Shown here piece after piece: positions 36,058-45,263 of a DNA stretch of 64,000 nucleotides. Origin of the DNA: Thecamonas trahens ATCC 50062 (lineage: Eukaryota; Protista; Apusomonadida); the NCBI RefSeq assembly GCF_000142905.1, contig NW_013657634.1, forward strand, positions 240,657-304,656, read 5' to 3'. The notes under the pieces are model-generated. The model searched no databases. It was given only the letters and a program-made list of their open reading frames with translations, and was not told the origin of the DNA. The stretch's first letter is position 1. Every line of letters starts with the position of its first letter. The translations under genes were made by a program, and so were the position numbers.

Positions 36058-37350
36058 TCAGACCCAGACATGCAGGCCGGCCGACGACGCCGTGGCCAGC
36101 GCCACGTTGCGGGCGGTGAGCGCGAGCACGTCTTCGCCGCGGGCCACCCTGCCCTTGGCCGTCTTGGGAATGCCGTACGTCGCAGTCGGCGTGGTCACCT
36201 CGCCCGCCAGCCAGCTCGCCATCGGCACAGCCGCCACCGTTCCGTCGTACGAGACGCTTGCAAGGCTGAACGCGTTGCCCGCCAGCGATGAGACCGCCGA
36301 GCTGTGGTACCGCGCGTTGACCGTCGGCCCGGCGTGCGGCGCCCGCGTGTCGATGGCGTACACGGCATTGTGCGGACGGCCGACCGAAACAACCAGCGTT
36401 TGACCATCGCCGCTCGACGAGAGAATCGGCAGCTCGAGTGCGTGGACGCCTGCGGCGAGGGCCAGCTCGAGCGCAGGCTCGCGCGCTGGTGCGCGCAGGT
36501 CCCAGCACCGCACGTACTTGTCGAGCGAGCCCGAGTAGAGGACCGATGGTGCCGCCGGATCAAAGGCCAGTGCGCGGACCGAGCCGCGATGCGGAAGCGT
36601 CCGCAGAGCGGCGTCGGGCGAGTTGACGTCAAACACCAGCGCCGAGTTGTCGTCCTGCCCACCGCCCGACACGACCCATGGCCGCTGCGCACACGCCGCG
36701 AGCGCAAAGACCGAGTCGGCATGGCCGGTCAGAGTCGCCACCGGCGACGCAGTCTCCAGATCAAACACTAGTGAGCCGCCCAGCTGGCGACCGAGGCCGA
36801 GCGCCACCAGACTCGGCGCGCCCGGCAGGAGACACATCGAGTTGACGGCGTCGCGGTCGGCAACCTGGACTGCGGTCGGGACGAGCTCGACTGGCGAGCG
36901 CCGCCCACGGTCGCCACGGGTACTGCTCCGATTACTTAGCGGTGTGGTGAGGAGCACGCCGCGCTTGCATCCGGCGAGCAGTACGTCCATTGCCGCGTGA
37001 TGGGCCAGGCAGCGGGCGTGGACATCGTCAGCCAGCGCCACTCGCTCCATGGATGCGGCGGCGTCCGGACGCGCCAGCCGGCTCAGCACCCGCATGGTAA
37101 GCCCGTACCGAACAAACCACTCGCTCTCGCGAGAGTCGCTGTCCTCGTCACGCCCATCAGAGCCGCCACTCGTCACGCATCCGTCGCCCATCAGCGGCGC
37201 AAGCTCGCAGGCGTACCGTCGTCGCCACAGTAGCGAGTCGGTAGCGAGCCGGCGCCAGTCGCGCGAGGCGCAGGAGAGGGCAAGGAGGTCACGAGTCGGC
37301 AGAAACTCGCAGATGTACAGCCTTAGCTCGTCAGGAAACCGGTCTATCAT
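36058..37350 (-). CDS. F-box/WD40 repeat protein
   Basis: F-box IDRFPDELRLYICEFLPTRDLLALSCASRDWRRLATDSLLWR; WD repeats LTGHADSVFAL, HRGSVRALAF..YSGSLDKYVRCWD, HSSAVSSL..SVSYDGTV. The ORF is open further up to 37485. Confidence 0.88.
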   Translation of the reverse strand: MIDRFPDELRLYICEFLPTRDLLALSCASRDWRRLATDSLLWRRRYACELAPLMGDGCVTSGGSDGRDEDSDSRESEWFVRYGLTMRVLSRLARPDAAASMERVALADDVHARCLAHHAAMDVLLAGCKRGVLLTTPLSNRSSTRGDRGRRSPVELVPTAVQVADRDAVNSMCLLPGAPSLVALGLGRQLGGSLVFDLETASPVATLTGHADSVFALAACAQRPWVVSGGGQDDNSALVFDVNSPDAALRTLPHRGSVRALAFDPAAPSVLYSGSLDKYVRCWDLRAPAREPALELALAAGVHALELPILSSSGDGQTLVVSVGRPHNAVYAIDTRAPHAGPTVNARYHSSAVSSLAGNAFSLASVSYDGTVAAVPMASWLAGEVTTPTATYGIPKTAKGRVARGEDVLALTARNVALATASSAGLHVWV

Positions 37351-37489
37351 TGTGGTGGTTGGAAACGACGTCCAGCCGCTCTTGGGGCTCTCGGTGTGGC
37401 GACGAGTGGCTCTGTCCGTGGATGGGATCGGCCGGCGGAGGCGGGCGACAGGGATCCGAGCCGATGCAGCTATCGCCATAGTCATGATT

Positions 37490-37771
37490 AGTCGTTGCCC
37501 ATGGTTAGTCGTTGCCCATGGTTAGTCGTTGCCCATGGTTAGTCGTTGCCCATCATCAGTCATTGCCCATCATCAGTCGTTGCCCATCATCAGTCGTTGC
37601 CCATCATCAGTCCTTGCCCATCATCAGTCCTTGCCCACCATCAGTCATTGCCCATCATCAGTCGTTGCCCATCATCAGTCGTTGCCCATCATCACTCGTT
37701 GCCCATCATCACTCGTTGCCCATCATCACTCGTTGCCCATCATCAGTCGTTGCCCATCATCAGTCATTGCC
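37490..37771 (+). repeat. 17-bp minisatellite AGTCGTTGCCCATCATC (first three copies end ATGGTT), ~16.5 copies
   Basis: Contiguous units without spacers, lying between the divergent F-box and myosin genes. Confidence 0.95.
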
Positions 37772-37869
37772 GCCATTCCAACGGCCCAACACCACGTCAC
37801 TGCCACCACCACACACTCACACACACACACATCCACAAACACACACACACACACATCCATACACATACC

Positions 37870-40800
37870 ATGTCGACCCTCCAGATAGGTGACATGTGCT
37901 GGGTGGAGAACCTGGCAGCAGGTACTAGCGGAGGAGAGCAGGCCTCCCATGGCCACCACCCGTCGCGAGTGGCAGGCAAGGTCCTCGCCGTCTCGGACTC
38001 GATGGTGACGGTGGCCCCAGAATGGGGCGAGCTCTGTCCGACCTGTGCCCTCAAGCCGGAGCATACGCCTGCTCATCGTCCGGCAAAGGTCAACGTTCCG
38101 CTGGGAAACTCGGCAGACGCGGGCCAGCTCGCCGTGAGTGTCATGGACACGTCCAACGCCGAGGGGAGGGCAGACATGATGGAGCTGGCTGATCTGGCGG
38201 TGGGCGAGCTGATGTACAACCTGAGGTTGAGGTACAAGGCCCAGCCCATGCAGTTCTACACATATGTCGGGGACATCCTGGTTGTCGTCAATCCCATGGC
38301 GGACATGGGCGTCTCTGGCGAGGAGACAAAGGCTACGTACGCCGGCCTGCCGTTCCGCGATGCGAGCGCCCCGCCGCACATCTACGCCGTCGCCGAGGCT
38401 GCCCACAAGGCGCTCGCCGAGACGGCCGCTCCGCAGGTCATCGTCATCTCGGGCGAGTCTGGCGCTGGCAAGACATACGCCACCAACGACGTGCTCGACT
38501 TTCTGGCCTACCGCGGCAGCGGGTGCGACCCAGCTCCTGCTCCCGGTCCTAACGCTGGCGCTGCTCCTTCTCCGCCCGGGGCGGAGATTGTGGCCAAGAT
38601 CCGGGCTATCTCGGGCGTCATTGAAGCGCTGGGCAATGCCAAGACGTCGCGGAACCACAACTCGTCGCGGTTTGGCAAGCTCGTCAAGGTCCAGTTCGAC
38701 GAGGCCGGGGCCATCGAGGGCGCCGCGCTGCAGACGTACCTACTGGAAAAGTCGCGGATTGTCGACCAACAGCCCGGTGAGCGCAACTACCACATCTTCT
38801 ACCTCATGTTCCAGTTCCTCGACCGCGGTGAGCGGTCGGCGCGCGGTCTCTCGGACTCGGTCGCGGACTACCCGTACCTCGTCGGCTCGCACGGCAAGAA
38901 CGCCAAGTCATGGCAGTACATGCCTAGCGATCCGTCGGCGCCGCAAGCCGGGCTCGAGCCCATGGCCGACGCCAAGCGGTGGGAGGCGTTCATCGACGCT
39001 GTTGTCACGCTTAACCTCGAGGACGATCTCTCGTGCGTGTGGGACACGCTCGCCGCCATCCTGCACCTCGGCACGCTGACTTTTGAGGAGCACGCTGGCT
39101 CTTCGACCGGCTTTTGCACCGTCTCGCCGCCTGGAGTTGTCTCGCGCATTGCAGGCCTCCTCGCTGTCGACGCCGACGCTCTGGCCACCAATCTGCTCTC
39201 GTGCGAGGTCGTCAACATGCGCCGTGCGTACCGACCCGACAAGGCCAAGCAGACCGCCGACGCGCTGGCCAAACTCCTTTACGCCTCGCTCTTTGACGTC
39301 ATCATCGAGCACATCAACGCGTCGATCAAAACCGGCTTCACCCGCCGGTGGATCGGCGTCCTCGACATCTTTGGCTTTGAGTCGTTCCAGTCGCTGCCGG
39401 ACAAGCACGGCGTGCCCGACACCGCCAACCGGTTTGAGCAGCTCTGCATCAACCTCACCAACGAGCGCCTGCAGCGGTTCTTCTACGACCAGCTCATTCC
39501 CAAGCAGCTCGCCCACTACGCCGACCACGGGCTCGACGTCGACGCCATCGAGTACGACGACAACACCCTCTGTGTCAACCTCATCATGGAGGGCCGCAAG
39601 TCGCTCTTTGGCGCCCTCAACAACGCCACCAAGGAGGCTGCCACCCTTCCGGCCTTCCGCAACAACCCGGAGCTTGCCGAGCGGCGCTGGGTCGAGACCA
39701 TCAAGTCGACGTACAAAGGCGGCAAAGGCCGTCTCGCGCCCTCGACCGTAGTCCGCAAGTCCTCGCCCGACGAATTTGTCGGCTGGTTTGATGACAAGCT
39801 TGACTCGCGGGCCCACACCCAGTTTGCCGTCCACCACTACGCTGAAACCGTGTGGTACACCGTCGACGGGTGCGTCGAGAAAAACGCCGACAAGATTGCC
39901 CCCGAGCTTGTCACGCTTGTCTCGTCCTCATCGGCCGCCTTTGTCGCCGGCCTTTTTGATCCGGACCGCCTCGAGCTCAACACCTCGGTTGCCGACAAGT
40001 TTGCCGAGCAGCTGCGGGCACTCGTCTCGCCGGCGTCGTGGAACGTGCCTGGCCACCCGTCGGGCATGCTTGACCTTGCAGCGGAGCCTTTTTTCGTTCG
40101 CTGCGTCAAGCCAATCTGCTCGCGGGTGCCCGGCATGCCGCGTGCGCCGCTCTCCAACCACAAGGTGCTCGACCAGCTGCGGTCCGCCGGTATGTACGCG
40201 GTCATCCAGATGCGGCTTGCCGGCTATGCGTCTGAAGTGGACAAGGCCCAGTTTGTCGAGACCTACACCGAGCTTGTTGACGACATGGCAGCGTTCAACT
40301 CACTCTCGCTTGACAACCAAGTCCGCTCCATTTGTGCATCCGTCGTCGCCTCTACTCAGCACGACTTGACAAGCGAATCCGGCATGGCGCCGTACCAGAT
40401 CGGCAACTCAAACCTGGTCTTCCTCAAGGACGCCATGAACTACGCCCTGCGCGACGCGCTCGCTGCGGCTCGCGCGGCGCGTGCGGCCAAGCAAGCGCTG
40501 GCGCTCTCGCATTTTGCGGCGCTTTTCTCGATGTGGAGCGTCCGCCAGTCGATGCCGCGGCTGGTGCAGGTCTACGAACAGAACCAGGAACGCCTCGAGT
40601 TTATCCGGACCCGCATCGAGGGTGGTGCAAGCGAAGCAGAGGCCAAGGCCGCATGGGACGCCGAGCTCGCCACCCGCGCCGCGGCCATGGAGGCCGAATA
40701 CAAGCTCGAGCATTTTATCCCGCTGCAAAAGGCCGCCGCCGCCGAGCCAGTCGACAAGCTCGACGCCGCCATTGCCAACATGCTCAAGGACGAGCCAGCC

Positions 40801-42507
40801 GGTGAGGCGCGCGCGGCTCTCGAGGCTAGGCGCAAAGCGCTGAAGGCATCGGCCAAGGCGGTTAACGCCGCGCTTGCTGCGCTCGAGGCCGACGTGTACA
40901 ACGCCGAGGCCGAGACCGCTGCCGCAGACGCCATTGCTGACCTGGACGCAGTTGTTCTCGCCGAGGAGGCCGCGTATGCAGAGGACGTCAAGCGGCGCGA
41001 GGCGGCCGCCGCTGCTGCTGCTGAAGCCGCGTACATTGCCACGCATGTGACGTCGGTGGAGACTGCGGCGAACGCGGTGCCGTTCGCCAAGGTCAAGGCC
41101 GCACTCACGGCGTTTGGCAAGCGGCATGCCAACATCCTCGGCAAACGCGAGAACCTTGAGAGCGCACTCCATGCTCATGGGGCCTCGCTCGACGACGCTC
41201 GCGCAGCGCTTGAGGCGCGGCTGGACGAGTTGCGGGCAAGCCCGCATTCAGACGAAGTGCAAGCCGGGGTGGCGACGGCGCTATCGGCGCTCGAGGTGCT
41301 CGTTGGCGGCGTCCACGAGTTCCTGCGGCTGATGGAGGAGCGCGTGGCGATGGCAGCGGCGGCGGAGGAAGCCAAGGAGCGCAAGCGCGAGGCGCGGCGC
41401 AGAAAGCGTGAGGCGCGCGAGGCACGGAAGCGCAAGCTGCTGGAGGCGCGGCAGGCCATGCTCTCGGCGCAGGAGCGAGTGGCCGCGGAGCGGGCGGCGG
41501 AGCGCAAGCGGCAGGAGGAGGCCAAAAAGCGGGCGGTGAAGCTGCTCAAGAAGAAGCAGAAGCGGCGGCTGCGGTGGTTCGAGACAGCAAGCGTGGCCAT
41601 GGACGGCCTGCGTGTCTTGTTCCACCATGCCGAGGCCACGGTGCGGTACCTTGGCCCGCTGCCGTCGGCATCGGTCAACCTCCTCACGGCGCCCTACTAC
41701 ATCGGGCTGGAGATGCCGTATCCGTCGGATTTGTTCAACTCGGGTGACTACGAGGGTACGCAGCTGTTCGAGTGCTCGCCGGAGCATGGCATGTTTGTGG
41801 CGCAGGACTTGGTCTCGGTCCTGGTCGCCAGCGACGAGCTTCGCGCCGGCGAGCGGCATCTGCAGGTCGGCGACCGGGTGTGGCGGCGGAACCATGTTCC
41901 GCTGCAGACCGGCGTCATCATGTACTACGGTGAGACTCACTTTGACGAGGGCCCGTTTGTGGGCATCGCCCTCGACCAGGCCGGCTCTGGCACCAACTCG
42001 GGCCGGGTCCACGGCTTCAAGTACTTTAAGTGCGCCAAGGACTCGGGCCTGTTTCTGCGGCCAGAAGAGCTCGAGCGGATAGAGCCGTGGTCGCACTCTG
42101 TCGTCAAGGAGCGAACCAACGAGTACATGATTCTTAACGACATTTATCTCGACGACGACGAGTACTCGGAGTACGATGGTGACGAGGAGGATGGGACCAG
42201 CTCGCGGGCCAGCTCACGGCCGGCGTCGGGTGACGACTCGTCGTCGGGCGCGGTCTCCGAGACCGTTCTAGACGCCATGGATCCCGACGAGCTCTACGCG
42301 CTTGCCGGTGGCGATGCCATGCTGACCGACGGCGCGTCTGAGCCGCTCTCGTCGGGAGTGCGGCTCAAAAAGTCACGGCTCTCGCGGCGCGGATCGGGCG
42401 CCGGTCGGTCGATGTCGATGCGCAATGTCGAGACAGCGCGGAGTGGACATCTAGTGCCGCCGATGCAGCGGGCGGCGTCGTCGCGAAACCGGATGCGCCG
42501 ACGGTAG
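37870..42507 (+). CDS. Unconventional myosin with helical/SAH tail and two C-terminal CAP-Gly domains
   Basis: ATG at 37870 (MSTLQIGDMCWV). P-loop GESGAGKT, switch I NHNSSRFGK, switch II DIFGFE, FEQLCINLTNERLQ, FAVHHYA, FVRCVKP, VLDQLRSAGM. CAP-Gly motifs ATVRYLG..YIGLEM..NSGDYEGTQLFECSPEHGMFV and LQVGDRV..GVIMYYGETHFDEGPFVGIALD..GTNSGRVHGFKYFKCAKDSGLFL. Confidence 0.92.
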   Translation: MSTLQIGDMCWVENLAAGTSGGEQASHGHHPSRVAGKVLAVSDSMVTVAPEWGELCPTCALKPEHTPAHRPAKVNVPLGNSADAGQLAVSVMDTSNAEGRADMMELADLAVGELMYNLRLRYKAQPMQFYTYVGDILVVVNPMADMGVSGEETKATYAGLPFRDASAPPHIYAVAEAAHKALAETAAPQVIVISGESGAGKTYATNDVLDFLAYRGSGCDPAPAPGPNAGAAPSPPGAEIVAKIRAISGVIEALGNAKTSRNHNSSRFGKLVKVQFDEAGAIEGAALQTYLLEKSRIVDQQPGERNYHIFYLMFQFLDRGERSARGLSDSVADYPYLVGSHGKNAKSWQYMPSDPSAPQAGLEPMADAKRWEAFIDAVVTLNLEDDLSCVWDTLAAILHLGTLTFEEHAGSSTGFCTVSPPGVVSRIAGLLAVDADALATNLLSCEVVNMRRAYRPDKAKQTADALAKLLYASLFDVIIEHINASIKTGFTRRWIGVLDIFGFESFQSLPDKHGVPDTANRFEQLCINLTNERLQRFFYDQLIPKQLAHYADHGLDVDAIEYDDNTLCVNLIMEGRKSLFGALNNATKEAATLPAFRNNPELAERRWVETIKSTYKGGKGRLAPSTVVRKSSPDEFVGWFDDKLDSRAHTQFAVHHYAETVWYTVDGCVEKNADKIAPELVTLVSSSSAAFVAGLFDPDRLELNTSVADKFAEQLRALVSPASWNVPGHPSGMLDLAAEPFFVRCVKPICSRVPGMPRAPLSNHKVLDQLRSAGMYAVIQMRLAGYASEVDKAQFVETYTELVDDMAAFNSLSLDNQVRSICASVVASTQHDLTSESGMAPYQIGNSNLVFLKDAMNYALRDALAAARAARAAKQALALSHFAALFSMWSVRQSMPRLVQVYEQNQERLEFIRTRIEGGASEAEAKAAWDAELATRAAAMEAEYKLEHFIPLQKAAAAEPVDKLDAAIANMLKDEPAGEARAALEARRKALKASAKAVNAALAALEADVYNAEAETAAADAIADLDAVVLAEEAAYAEDVKRREAAAAAAAEAAYIATHVTSVETAANAVPFAKVKAALTAFGKRHANILGKRENLESALHAHGASLDDARAALEARLDELRASPHSDEVQAGVATALSALEVLVGGVHEFLRLMEERVAMAAAAEEAKERKREARRRKREAREARKRKLLEARQAMLSAQERVAAERAAERKRQEEAKKRAVKLLKKKQKRRLRWFETASVAMDGLRVLFHHAEATVRYLGPLPSASVNLLTAPYYIGLEMPYPSDLFNSGDYEGTQLFECSPEHGMFVAQDLVSVLVASDELRAGERHLQVGDRVWRRNHVPLQTGVIMYYGETHFDEGPFVGIALDQAGSGTNSGRVHGFKYFKCAKDSGLFLRPEELERIEPWSHSVVKERTNEYMILNDIYLDDDEYSEYDGDEEDGTSSRASSRPASGDDSSSGAVSETVLDAMDPDELYALAGGDAMLTDGASEPLSSGVRLKKSRLSRRGSGAGRSMSMRNVETARSGHLVPPMQRAASSRNRMRRR

Positions 42508-42510
42508 CAG

Positions 42511-45263
42511 TTAGGGCGTAAAACAGGTCTCCAGATGAAAGTGGTAGTCGACGAGCGACGTGGCCGAGACGGCAGTGGTGGCGGCGTAGACGGCCGAGGC
42601 GAGCGAGGAGTTACCAGAGAAGAAAACGCCGACAGCGGCGTTGGGCCGGGCGAGAAGGCCCGAGTCGGAGACCACATCCTCGGCGTCGAGGTAGGAAAAA
42701 GCCGGGCCATGTCGGGCCGACCGCGGATGACGGTAAAAGGGAGCGCAAGAAAGACGTCGCGGGTGACAAAGAGGCGAACGTCGAGGGTGAGATCAGGCTC
42801 GTGGATAGAGGTGTAGAACTGGGACTCGAGCACCTCGAGCACGTCCTGGAACCAACGGAACGAGTCGAGGTCGCGGCAGACCCACCAAAAGTGGAGATGC
42901 TTGAGTGGGAGAGCGAGACCGTGCTGGAGCCGGAAAATGATGTCGGAGAGGACGGCGGCGTAGGGAGTGACCCCGATGCCGGACGCGATGAGGACGGCGC
43001 GGTGGTAGGAGAGATACGGGTGCGGGTCCGAGCCAAACGGGCCCGCGACGTAGAGCCGGAGCGATGACGCCGGTGACGTCGGGTCCTCGATGCCGGACGC
43101 GGAGGACTCGGCGAGCGCGTAGACCTGACGGGTCCAAGAGTCGCGGGCGCCGACAGCCTTAAAATACACGTGCACGTGCTCCATAAGCGGCGAGGAGGCG
43201 ACCGAGAACGGATGCCACTGCAGCTTGGAAATGCTTGGTAGGTGGAGGTGGACGTAGTCGCCGAGGGCGAGGGCGCGCGTCATGCGCGCCGACTTGACAA
43301 AGGCAACATGGACGACCGATCCCGGGAGCGCGTCGAGCGCGACAATGCGGGCGTCGGCGAGCGCGTGTGGCGCCGAGATGCCGCGCGCAATGAGGTAGAG
43401 AAGATAGCCCGGTGCGATGTAGTAGAGGGTACGGAGGGTGGTGGGATGCGCGACGAGGAGGAGCGGGAGGACGAGCGCGAGCTGATGTGGGTAGTAAAAG
43501 ACCTCAAAGGCGATGCGGCGGATCTTCGGGTGTGCAAGCGGGACAATGGCGAGCATCAGAAGGAGGAGAAGGATGCCGGAGAGGCCGAGCCAGGTCGAGA
43601 AGACAATGGTGAGCGGCGAGTTGTGGGTGCGAAAGGCGGCGAGCGGGGTGCCCGGCGCAAAGGCCAGGTCGCGATCAGCCTGCGATGCAGCGGCAGTGCG
43701 AAAGGCGTTGACAACGTGAGCAGCGGTGTGGCCGAGAGCGCAGGCAAAGGTGGCCACTCCGCCGAGCCGATGGAAGAGCATCATGTGCTCCTGTGAGGGC
43801 CGGAGCCAGAGCGTGGCGGAGCGAGGCATGCGCGGCAGAAAGACTCGAACGACGGTGGTGTAGGTGGCGAGGCAGACCGGGAGAAAGAGAAACGCGACGC
43901 CGACGCGGATACCCGCGGCAAAGACCTTGGCGGCAACGAGCGAGGCACCAAGAATGCGGTGTGCTGCGTAGGAGCGGGCGATACGCGCGATGTAGACTGA
44001 CTCGAGGGTGACAGCAAGGCAGATGAGGGCAAGCCAGAGGCAAAACGCTGGGTCGAGCTTGGCATGCATGCGGGCGGTGGAAGCGGCGGCGGCGACCGAG
44101 GCCCGGAGCGATGCGAGGTGCGAGGTCGCCGGCGCCGCGCTGGATGCCGAGCCGGAGATGCCGTAAGAGGCGAGTCGGGCGAGAACGCCTGCGGGCAGGT
44201 CTGTGGCAGTGGCGAGTGAGCTCCACTGAGCCGGCTCGAGGGCGAGAACGTCGCCGACGGTGGCGAGCTCCTGGAGCGCAAACTGTGCCATCCAGAGTTT
44301 CGCGCGCTCACGGCCGACGTTGGGTGAGAGCTTGAGATCCTCGGCGACAGCGAGGAGGGCGGCCAGAAGCGGTGCGTCTGGTGAGAAGGCGACTGTCGAG
44401 TATGTGCGGTGGGTTGTGAGCCAGGATCGCCACTGGCGAGTGGTGGGTGTAGCGTGGATGTGGAGGGTGAGCTCGGTGGCATGCTCGAGCTCGCCCCAGG
44501 TAAAGGCGGAGATGAAGCGCGGCCAGTCAAGGACGATGCTGCCGACCGGACGGGTCGGCGAGGCCGGCGACGAAAACGAGATGGCGCGCGAGCGCGAGAG
44601 GCTCGGGGAGAAGGCCTCGTTGTCGGCGGCGACCGAGGAGGCGAGCCACGAGCTGTGGATCTCGGCGACGAGATCGTCGCCAGCGAGGGCAGCGCCGCCG
44701 GGAGCGGCAAGAATGAGATGCGGGATGTTGCAGAGGGTGGCGAGGGAGAGCTCAGCGCCGGCTGTGGTGGAGCCGGCTGCCATGAGGAAGACAAACATGA
44801 GGCGGAGCTTCTGTGGCGCCTCGCCAGCAAAGGCCGAGGCAAAAGCGAGAAACTCAAGGAGTGGGACGGAGGGAGCGCGGGACGAGAGGCGCTTCTTCTT
44901 GGAGGGCGGTGGCGGGCGAGCGAGAATGGCGAAGAGGAGATCGACGGTGGAGGAGGCCGCATCCCAGCCCGTCAGTCGGGCAAAGGCACGGCGGGAGAGG
45001 CGGTAGGTGAGGTTCGATGCGATGGCAAAGACGTGGGCCCAGCGCTTGATGAGCGAGTCGGGGCGGAAGACCCAGGCAGTGGCGACGCGAGTCATACCGC
45101 GGCCAAAGCGGAGGATGCGGCGACGCATGCCGGTGATAGGACAGACGCCCGTGGAGACGCCGAGCATGGCCTTTGCCGACTCGAGGGCGATGGATGCGTT
45201 CTGGAGGCTCCGCCAGTAGCTCGCAGCCGAGGCATCAAGTAGAGGCCTCTGCGCCGTGAGCAT
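42511..45263 (-). CDS. NADPH oxidase (NOX5/RBOH-like) family flavocytochrome; apparent frameshift at 42696-42700
   Basis: Bis-His helices FHRLGG..LGHTAAH and FYYPHQL..LLVAHP; FAD motif ISKLQWHPFSVAS; VAGPFG; NADPH motifs LIASGIGVTPY, FWWVCRD, GRPD. Adding one T restores the NOX-type end ..AVGVFFSG..YHFHLETCFTP* with the stop at 42511-42513. Confidence 0.85.

What the first reader, a model, noticed from the sequence alone, without database searches (positions are those of the whole stretch)
37870..42507. Myosin motor fused to tandem CAP-Gly domains: candidate actin-microtubule cross-linking motor
Seen: one intronless ORF with an intact myosin motor (P-loop, switch I/II, relay, SH1 region), at most one degenerate IQ, a long helical tail and two CAP-Gly domains (~41600-41820 and ~41860-42080). 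Established: CAP-Gly domains bind alpha-tubulin/EB1/CLIP acidic-aromatic C-termini and occur in p150Glued, CLIP-170, TBCB/E and the kinesin KIF13B. Myosins known to contact microtubules typically use MyTH4-FERM instead. I do not recall a characterised myosin class with CAP-Gly tails. Inference: a motor that pulls microtubule ends or flagellar roots along actin, which would suit a gliding amoeboflagellate. The GKNDG motif is altered (GTNSG; FNSG), so the ligand may differ.
Basis: partly seen in the sequence, partly recalled or inferred. Interest (0 to 1): 0.85.

Follow-up and report, generated by a model that had tools for sequence, protein, structure and literature searches.

The report
Apusomonad myosin with tandem CAP-Gly tail
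This is a real gene of the gliding protist Thecamonas trahens that joins an actin motor (myosin) to two copies of a domain that normally grips microtubule tails; it is one of six such genes in the genome, was listed in 2014 as a nameless "orphan" myosin, and its function has never been studied.

Summary
Window 37870-42507 (+) is one open frame of 1545 codons. It is Thecamonas trahens gene AMSG_09426, whose public model removes a 54-nt in-frame intron.

- **Domains:** a full myosin motor (Pfam E 1e-127) with intact P-loop, switch I and switch II; one degenerate IQ; about 390 residues of helix ending in a basic ER/K helix; two CAP-Gly domains that each pass Pfam's threshold. The second superposes on p150Glued CAP-Gly (Z 13.9, rmsd 0.8 Å).
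- **Not a fusion artefact:** the genome holds six collinear myosin + tandem-CAP-Gly genes. The scan's first readers noted four others on other pieces of this genome.
- **One clade:** the six genes and four environmental orthologues group together (UFBoot 94). All ten carry a 10-17-residue insertion after switch II that 47 other myosins lack.
- **Already catalogued:** Sebé-Pedrós et al. 2014 list it as an unnamed "Thecamonas orphan". I found no text describing the CAP-Gly tail and no functional work.
- **Microtubule binding is inferred only.** α-tubulin here ends in -EEY. This copy reads GTNSG where paralogues C34 and C57 keep GKNDG. The single EB1 hit reads on to a C-terminus with no aromatic residue.

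Verdict: a new variant of a known kind, moderately interesting.

The parts
37870..42507 (+). Complete coding ORF of the myosin-CAP-Gly gene (T. trahens AMSG_09426), 1545 codons plus stop
   Evidence: a frame-specific GC3 signal runs through the whole ORF
37922..37975 (+). 54-nt in-frame GT..AG intron removed in the public gene model (aa 19-36 of the ORF); not verified
38173..40416 (+). Myosin motor domain (aa 102-849)
   Evidence: Pfam PF00063, E 1.4e-127; best solved relatives are myosin X, VIIa and IE at about 260 bits, with no clear class
38452..38475 (+). P-loop GESGAGKT (aa 195-202)
38653..38679 (+). Switch I NHNSSRFGK (aa 262-270)
39364..39381 (+). Switch II DIFGFE (aa 499-504)
39382..39432 (+). 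Clade-specific insertion between switch II and the relay-helix FEQ: 17 residues here, where 47 other myosins have 6
40513..40545 (+). Single degenerate IQ-like motif FAALFSMWSVR (aa 882-892); paralogues C34 and C9 have LQALHRMWLAR
40417..41250 (+). Ala-rich helical neck and tail (aa 850-1127); several helices are modelled confidently up to about aa 1060, then with low confidence
   Evidence: AF2 model; no significant PDB fold match
41251..41586 (+). Long continuous helix (aa 1128-1239). Its last 90 residues are 53% E/R/K and net basic (37% K+R against 17% D+E). Candidate single alpha-helix spacer and electrostatic microtubule contact
41623..41805 (+). CAP-Gly domain 1 (aa 1252-1312); GKNDG position reads FNSG; degenerate in all paralogues
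   Evidence: Pfam 40.8 bits, E 2e-10 when scanned alone; alignment A1
41866..42069 (+). CAP-Gly domain 2 (aa 1333-1400); GKNDG position reads GTNSG (aa 1374-1378)
   Evidence: Pfam 68.1 bits; CLIP-170/CLIP-115/p150 E about 1e-11; VIA Z 13.9, rmsd 0.8 Å over 71 residues to p150Glued
42088..42135 (+). Conserved C-terminal helix after CAP-Gly2 (invariant Trp 1407; PW[S/D/T]...[D/E]Y motif), modelled as part of the CAP-Gly module
42139..42192 (+). Acidic, aromatic-containing stretch (aa 1424-1441); an acidic cluster follows the helix in every family member
42193..42504 (+). Ser/Gly/Arg-rich tail with no Pfam match, specific to this paralogue, ending in a basic run

Best explanation
The locus encodes one polypeptide, a catalytically competent unconventional myosin heavy chain of an apusomonad-restricted, so far unnamed ('orphan') class. 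The class is defined by a 10-17-residue insertion directly after switch II, a single IQ position, a long helical tail ending in a basic ER/K helix, and a rigid module of two CAP-Gly domains plus a conserved helix and an acidic cluster. Most likely mechanism (inferred): the motor walks or pulls on actin while the tail module docks onto acidic-aromatic C-termini, with help from the adjacent basic helix. The best candidate ligand is the -EEY end of T. trahens α-tubulin on the stable root and cortical microtubules of the cell. That would couple the actin and microtubule systems within one protein. For this paralogue the docking is probably weaker or retargeted, because the Lys and Asp of GKNDG are replaced (GTNSG) and the IQ is degraded. 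Shown: gene integrity, domain identity, fold, paralogy, clade and purifying selection. Inferred: ligand, oligomeric state, direction, cellular role.
For: - **One gene.** A single 1545-codon ORF with frame-specific GC3 throughout.
- **Six collinear paralogues.** Six motor + tandem-CAP-Gly genes lie on six contigs. C25 is also one uninterrupted 1594-codon frame.
- **Environmental orthologues.** Full-length single-ORF orthologues P0003, P0004, P0005 and P0007 exist.
- **Active-looking motor.** ATPase motifs are intact in all members.
- **One clade.** UFBoot 94 / SH-aLRT 76, and one clade in 92% of bootstrap trees. All 10 members share the post-switch-II insertion, which is absent from 47 other myosins including T. 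trahens class I, II and WW-tail myosins.
- **Genuine CAP-Gly domains.** Both pass the Pfam threshold alone. The AF2 module has pLDDT 88 and pTM 0.80. Domain 2 matches p150Glued at Z 13.9.
- **Canonical motif in paralogues.** GKNDG is retained in C34 and C57.
- **Selection.** For the orthologue pair C25/P0003, dN/dS is 0.19 for the motor, 0.32 for the helical tail and 0.24 for the CAP-Gly module, so the tail is as constrained as the motor.
- **A ligand exists.** α-tubulin ends ...YVEEY and β-tubulin ...YEPEY.
- **Cell-biological setting.** Apusomonads have stable root and cortical singlet microtubules beside actin-dependent shape change (PMC12714865).
Against: - There is no binding, localisation or expression data of any kind.
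- This copy lacks the GKNDG Lys. From my own knowledge, not tested here, that Lys is needed for EEY/F binding in p150Glued and CLIP-170.
- CAP-Gly1 is degenerate in all members.
- No canonical IQ is present, so the light chain and lever are unknown.
- This paralogue has the longest branch in its subclade and no orthologue was found for it, so relaxed constraint cannot be excluded.
- Some CAP-Gly domains, such as those of CYLD, bind non-tubulin partners (PDB titles).
- The EB1 hit, read to its first in-frame stop, ends ...DEAVEA with no aromatic residue.
Confidence: 0.5

Rival explanations
1. The tandem CAP-Gly module is a cargo or adaptor-binding domain, not a microtubule binder. It would recognise a C-terminal aromatic, zinc-knuckle, proline-rich or ubiquitin-like partner, and the protein would be an ordinary actin-based transporter.
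For: CAP-Gly folds bind SLAIN2, CLIP zinc knuckles and ubiquitin in solved complexes (titles). GKNDG is altered in four of the six paralogues, and CAP-Gly1 is degenerate in all. T. trahens has at least 65 CAP-Gly domain hits in many different proteins, which suggests diversified uses.
Against: Two paralogues keep canonical GKNDG. α-tubulin carries the canonical -EEY. A basic helix next to the CAP-Gly module resembles the basic region beside the p150Glued CAP-Gly (my own knowledge; composition).
Confidence: 0.28
2. This particular paralogue (C46) is a fast-evolving, sub- or neo-functionalised copy, possibly decaying, that has lost EEY binding and light-chain binding. The ancestral function would be carried by paralogues such as C34, C57 and C9.
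For: GTNSG replaces GKNDG. The IQ is degraded to FAALFSMWSVR, while C34 and C9 keep LQALHRMWLAR. Its CAP-Gly2 Pfam score is 67.7 bits against 82-92 for C9, C30, C34 and C57; only C25 scores lower, at 54.2. Its end branch is 0.46 against 0.18 for C25. The S/G/R-rich C-terminus is unique to it. No orthologue was found.
Against: The ORF is intact over 1545 codons with a strong coding GC3 signal. All ATPase motifs are intact. The CAP-Gly module still folds confidently.
Confidence: 0.18
3. The architecture is an artefact: a misassembly, or a read-through of two adjacent genes.
For: No transcript evidence could be obtained. Long chance ORFs are common in a genome of about 65% G+C.
Against: The same order of motor, helical tail and tandem CAP-Gly recurs at six loci on six contigs and in independent environmental assemblies. 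The linker is alignable across paralogues and under purifying selection. GC3 periodicity is unbroken.
Confidence: 0.02

Closest known systems
'Thecamonas orphan' myosins of Sebé-Pedrós et al. 2014 (PMC3942036); unclassified orphans in Kollmar & Mühlhausen 2017 (PMC5583752)
   Same: This very gene (Ttra_AMSG_09426) is in their dataset. [quoted passage not shown]
   Different: The text of both papers never mentions CAP-Gly. Not described there: a class name, the count of six paralogues, the switch-II insertion, environmental orthologues, or any functional proposal.
MyTH4-FERM myosins (VII, X, XV), the myosins known to touch microtubules
   Same: Outside the family they give the best sequence hits for the motor, at about 30% identity. 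Myosin X and VIIa are among the top solved matches. Both kinds would link actin to microtubules through the tail.
   Different: No MyTH4 or FERM domain is present. The CAP-Gly clade does not fall inside the class VII clade, and the backbone of the tree is unresolved. The microtubule-binding module would be of a different fold.
CLIP-170 / p150Glued (CAP-Gly +TIPs)
   Same: CAP-Gly2 has about 39-42% identity and near-identical fold. Two domains sit in tandem as in CLIP-170. A basic segment lies next to the CAP-Gly domains, and there is a long helical region.
   Different: The CAP-Gly domains are C-terminal rather than N-terminal. They are attached to a motor. GKNDG is altered in this copy. There is no zinc knuckle and no C-terminal ETF/EEY.
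Kinesin KIF13B (a motor with a C-terminal CAP-Gly)
   Same: A cytoskeletal motor with a CAP-Gly at the tail end; its domain matches.
   Different: KIF13B is a microtubule motor with one CAP-Gly. Here an actin motor carries two, so the tail would bind the other filament system.

Membership tests
Myosin superfamily (motor domain) | Full-length Myosin_head profile match above Pfam's gathering score | tested here: met
   427 bits against a cut-off of 33.3, profile positions 3-676 of 679
Myosin superfamily (motor domain) | Intact nucleotide-site motifs: P-loop GESGAGKT, switch I NxNSSRFGK, switch II DIxGFE | tested here: met
   All three are present in the window protein and in the six relatives scanned
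Myosin superfamily (motor domain) | Actin-activated ATPase and motility | not testable with these tools
   Needs biochemistry
CAP-Gly domain family (PF01302) | Profile match above the gathering score for each domain | tested here: met
   40.8 and 68.1 bits against 26.5, each domain scanned alone
CAP-Gly domain family (PF01302) | CAP-Gly fold | tested here: met
   Domain 2: Z 13.9, rmsd 0.8 Å over 71 of 71 residues of p150Glued. Domain 1 was confidently modelled but was not searched separately for a fold match
CAP-Gly domain family (PF01302) | Conserved GKNDG ligand-binding motif | tested here: not met
   GTNSG in domain 2 and FNSG in domain 1. The Asn is kept in domain 2, the Lys and Asp are lost. 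Paralogues C34 and C57 have GKNDG
CAP-Gly domain family (PF01302) | Binding of C-terminal EEY/F tails (α-tubulin, EB1, CLIP-170) | not testable with these tools
A candidate ligand exists: α-tubulin ends -VEEY
MyTH4-FERM myosins (classes VII/X/XV) | MyTH4 and FERM domains in the tail | tested here: not met
   No such Pfam match at E up to 1
MyTH4-FERM myosins (classes VII/X/XV) | Motor groups inside the class clade | tested here: not met
   The class VII clade (100/98) excludes the CAP-Gly clade. The deeper position is unresolved
Apusomonad CAP-Gly ('Thecamonas orphan') myosins | Motor clade, post-switch-II insertion and C-terminal tandem CAP-Gly with the PW-helix | tested here: met
   Clade 94/76; the window groups with C25 + P0003 at 100/100. 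The insertion is in 10 of 10 members against 0 of 47 other myosins. Module alignment A1
IQ-bearing lever (calmodulin-type light chain site) | IQxxxRGxxxR motif after the converter | tested here: not met
   No Pfam IQ match and no regex match. The homologous position reads FAALFSMWSVR

The most novel reading that the evidence does not exclude
These genes form a new, nameable myosin class restricted to apusomonads, the sister lineage of animals and fungi. Its tandem CAP-Gly module would bind tyrosinated α-tubulin on the microtubule roots. One polypeptide would then slide or anchor actin against microtubules during gliding and pseudopod formation. The conserved acidic cluster after the module might act as an intramolecular tubulin-tail mimic that autoinhibits it. 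The insertion at switch II and the relay helix would give the motor unusual kinetics.
Probability: 0.3. Interest if true: 0.72.

Novelty: new variant of a known kind. Interest (0 to 1): 0.55.

Why it matters
Known myosin-microtubule contacts use MyTH4-FERM tails or adaptor proteins. A myosin that carries the CAP-Gly module of +TIPs would be a second, independent way to build an actin-microtubule coupler.

It occurs in six copies, at least a fifth of the myosin loci detected, in the closest protist relatives of Opisthokonta. It therefore probably matters for apusomonad gliding and shape change.

The paralogues range from canonical GKNDG to GTNSG, GNTDG and GHNNG. That gives a natural series for testing what CAP-Gly specificity needs. 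The switch-II insertion is a clean marker for naming the class and finding it in new protist data.

The gene was already catalogued, so the gain is characterisation rather than discovery.

Tried and rejected
- **RNA evidence.** The single-mRNA question and the 54-nt intron stay untested.
- **Complex prediction.** Complex prediction for the CAP-Gly module with the α-tubulin C-terminal 45 residues was not available.
- **Word-based homology searches on the CAP-Gly region.** With the window protein the search found only the protein itself. With P0007 it found only itself, T. trahens C30 and a fungal CAP-Gly protein carrying the Dynactin family PF12455, probably dynactin p150.
- **Metagenome contig scans.** The single-protein scan found no relative.
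- **Atlas.** No large cluster combines Myosin_head and CAP_GLY. This is a blank by design, since only clusters of 50 or more members are searched.
- **Fold search of the helical tail.** Only generic 3- and 4-helix bundles appeared, none with E below 0.1.
- **ENA contigs L001 and L002 as possible transcripts.** Rejected: they have no poly(A) and their 5' ends differ.
- **CDS overlap with the minus-strand ORF 42294-45263.** Rejected: the NOX-like C-terminal exon is in another frame and stops at 42511-42513.
- **Literature.** No paper in the held library mentions myosin with CAP-Gly as an architecture. Figures are not held, so Fig. 6 of Sebé-Pedrós 2014 may still list CAP_GLY.
Full report
**What is there.** Window 37870-42507 (+) is a single open frame of 1545 codons. 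It matches Thecamonas trahens ATCC 50062 protein AMSG_09426 (P0001, 1527 aa) at every aligned residue; the only difference is an 18-residue gap. That gap reflects a 54-nt in-frame GT..AG intron at 37922-37975 that the public model removes. GC3 is 0.75-0.92 in every 100-codon bin, against about 0.55-0.64 in the flanks. One reading frame is therefore coding from the motor through the tail to the end.

**Domains.**
- Pfam gives Myosin_head at aa 102-849 (E 1.4e-127, almost the whole profile) and CAP_GLY twice.
- Scanned alone, both CAP-Gly domains pass the curated cut-off: aa 1252-1312 at 40.8 bits and aa 1333-1400 at 68.1 bits, against 26.5.
- The second domain aligns with CLIP-170, CLIP-115 and p150Glued at E about 1e-11.
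- An AF2 model of aa 1230-1430, built on an 8-sequence family alignment, has pLDDT 88 and pTM 0.80.
- In that model residues 100-177 superpose on the p150Glued CAP-Gly with Z 13.9 and rmsd 0.8 Å over 71 of 71 residues.
- The P-loop, switch I and switch II are canonical.
- There is no canonical IQ. The family alignment shows one IQ position: LQALHRMWLAR in paralogues C34 and C9, degraded here to FAALFSMWSVR.
- AF2 models the neck and tail (aa 820-1240) as helices. Several are confident up to about aa 1060, then comes a low-confidence stretch, then one 112-residue helix at aa 1128-1239.
- The last 90 residues of that helix are 53% E/R/K and net basic.
- After CAP-Gly2 come a conserved helix with an invariant Trp, an acidic cluster, and a Ser/Gly/Arg-rich end specific to this paralogue.

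**Not an artefact: a gene family.**
- The genome has six loci where a tandem CAP-Gly module of this type follows a myosin motor on the same strand. They lie on contigs C46 (the window), C25, C9, C57, C34 and C30.
- C25 is also one uninterrupted 1594-codon frame.
- These six are at least a fifth of the roughly 25 myosin motor loci detected.
- Four environmental proteins have the same architecture. In the tree they are orthologues of four different paralogues: P0003 of C25 (from a Tara Oceans scaffold), P0004 of C9, P0005 of C57 and P0007 of C30. The duplications therefore predate the species splits.
- For the C25/P0003 pair, dN/dS is about 0.19 (motor), 0.32 (helical tail) and 0.24 (CAP-Gly module). 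dS is near saturation, so these are rough values.

The scan's first readers had noted four further myosin-CAP-Gly genes on other pieces of this genome. My genome search accounts for them.

**Phylogeny and a class marker.**
- I built a careful IQ-TREE of the N-terminal two thirds of the motor (59 rows, 443 columns). It recovers the ten CAP-Gly myosins as one clade with UFBoot 94 and SH-aLRT 76; they form one clade in 92% of bootstrap trees.
- The window gene is sister to C25 + P0003 at 100/100.
- The clade lies outside the class VI, VII and XI groups. It also lies outside T. trahens groups that I identified by their tails as class I (TH1/PH), class II (Myosin_tail_1) and WW-tail myosins. The deeper backbone is unresolved.
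- Rows left out: one duplicate (L025 is the same gene as P0013) and the partial C57 piece, which was replaced by P0006.
- Independently of the tree, all ten members have 16-23 residues between DIxGFE and the relay-helix FEQ. Forty-seven of the other myosins in the set have exactly 6; one had no match to the pattern and one gave a spurious match.
- This insertion at the switch II/relay junction is a clean shared derived character. It sits at a mechanically important place.

**What is known.**
- The gene is in the dataset of Sebé-Pedrós et al. 2014.
[quoted passage not shown] Their Table S1 lists 'Techamonas orphan | No name'.
- Kollmar & Mühlhausen 2017 leave myosins specific to singly sampled lineages as orphans.
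- None of these texts, nor Odronitz & Kollmar 2007, mentions CAP-Gly. No paper in the held library pairs the two domains. Figures are not held, so a domain name inside a figure cannot be excluded.
- A profile of the tail module searched against 1.84 billion representative proteins gave full-length, single-stretch matches to six proteins. Three are T. trahens genes (P0001, P0002, P0006). P0144 is the C30 gene.
- P0147 is a 706-aa fragment with the end of a motor plus both CAP-Gly domains. P0149 is a 229-aa fragment with the CAP-Gly domains only.
- Other top hits are generic multi-CAP-Gly proteins without a motor.

**Ligand question.**
- T. trahens α-tubulin ends ...DLDYVEEY and β-tubulin ...GDYEPEY, so the canonical CAP-Gly ligand is present.
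- The only EB1-domain hit, read to its first in-frame stop, ends ...DEAVEA with no aromatic residue. An undetected intron could change this.
- Across paralogues the CAP-Gly2 motif reads GKNDG (C34, C57), GKNNG (C9), GHNNG (C30/P0007), GNTDG (C25/P0003) and GTNSG (window). CAP-Gly1 is degenerate in all.
- From my own knowledge, the Lys and Asn of GKNDG are needed for EEY/F binding in p150Glued and CLIP-170. Here the Asn is kept and the Lys is lost.
- The family was therefore probably ancestrally a tubulin-tail binder. The window copy is among the most derived. It also has a degraded IQ, a long branch, a unique C-terminus and no orthologue found.

**Mechanism, committed.** The protein is an actin motor whose distal tail, a basic helix plus the tandem CAP-Gly module, docks on acidic-aromatic C-termini. 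The most likely ligand is tyrosinated α-tubulin of the stable root and cortical microtubules described in apusomonads (PMC12714865). That would tether or slide actin against microtubules. My probability that the tail binds microtubules or tubulin is about 0.6 for the family and about 0.45 for this copy. The main rival is a non-tubulin cargo ligand. The oligomeric state, light chain and directionality are unknown. The acidic cluster after the module is conserved in every member and could act as an intramolecular mimic; that is speculation.

**Verdict.** This is a catalogued but uncharacterised orphan myosin class with a distinctive tail and a motor insertion. I rate it a new variant of a known kind, interest 0.55.

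Noticed in passing
window 37490-37771 and 37810-37855: A 17-bp minisatellite (16.6 copies, 95% matches, unit AGTCGTTGCCCATCATC) and a (CA)23 run fill most of the 384-bp divergent intergenic region. That region lies between an F-box/WD40 gene (36058-37485, minus strand) and the myosin start.
   Followed up: partly
window 42511-45263 (minus strand): A NOX/ferric-reductase-type oxidase gene converges on the myosin. Its apparent last exon stops at 42511-42513, 3 nt beyond the myosin stop at 42505-42507, so the 3' UTRs must overlap. The 989-codon ORF that runs on to 42294 is in a different frame at its end.
   Followed up: partly
L038 (G000:C3:575744-578833), about 1300-1650: This is the only EB1 C-terminal-domain hit in the genome. 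Read to its first in-frame stop it ends ...DEAVEA, without the EEY/F typical of animal and fungal EB1. There is a frame change inside the EB1 domain (ERDFY | GKLRDIE), which suggests a short intron or an indel.
   Followed up: partly
G000 genome-wide: At least 65 CAP-Gly domain hits lie above the Pfam cut-off at some 40 loci, which looks like a large repertoire. The dynactin p150 family (PF12455) gives only a sub-threshold hit at C4:561553-561927. This fits Hammesfahr & Kollmar 2012, who found no dynactin1 in T. trahens (PMC3583065).
   Followed up: partly
L044 (G000:C34:139500-146500): A second myosin gene, with motor plus PH domain and grouping with the class I clade, lies about 3.6 kb downstream of the C34 CAP-Gly myosin on the same strand.
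   Followed up: no
L041 (G000:C38), C-terminus of β-tubulin: β-tubulin also ends in an acidic-aromatic tail (...DDDFGDYEPEY). It could be a second CAP-Gly-type ligand.
   Followed up: no
L043 (G000:C10:197000-206500): A 2288-codon open frame encodes a myosin with a C-terminal WW domain. It represents a four-member T. trahens clade in the tree, possibly the class IV-like group of the literature.
   Followed up: no
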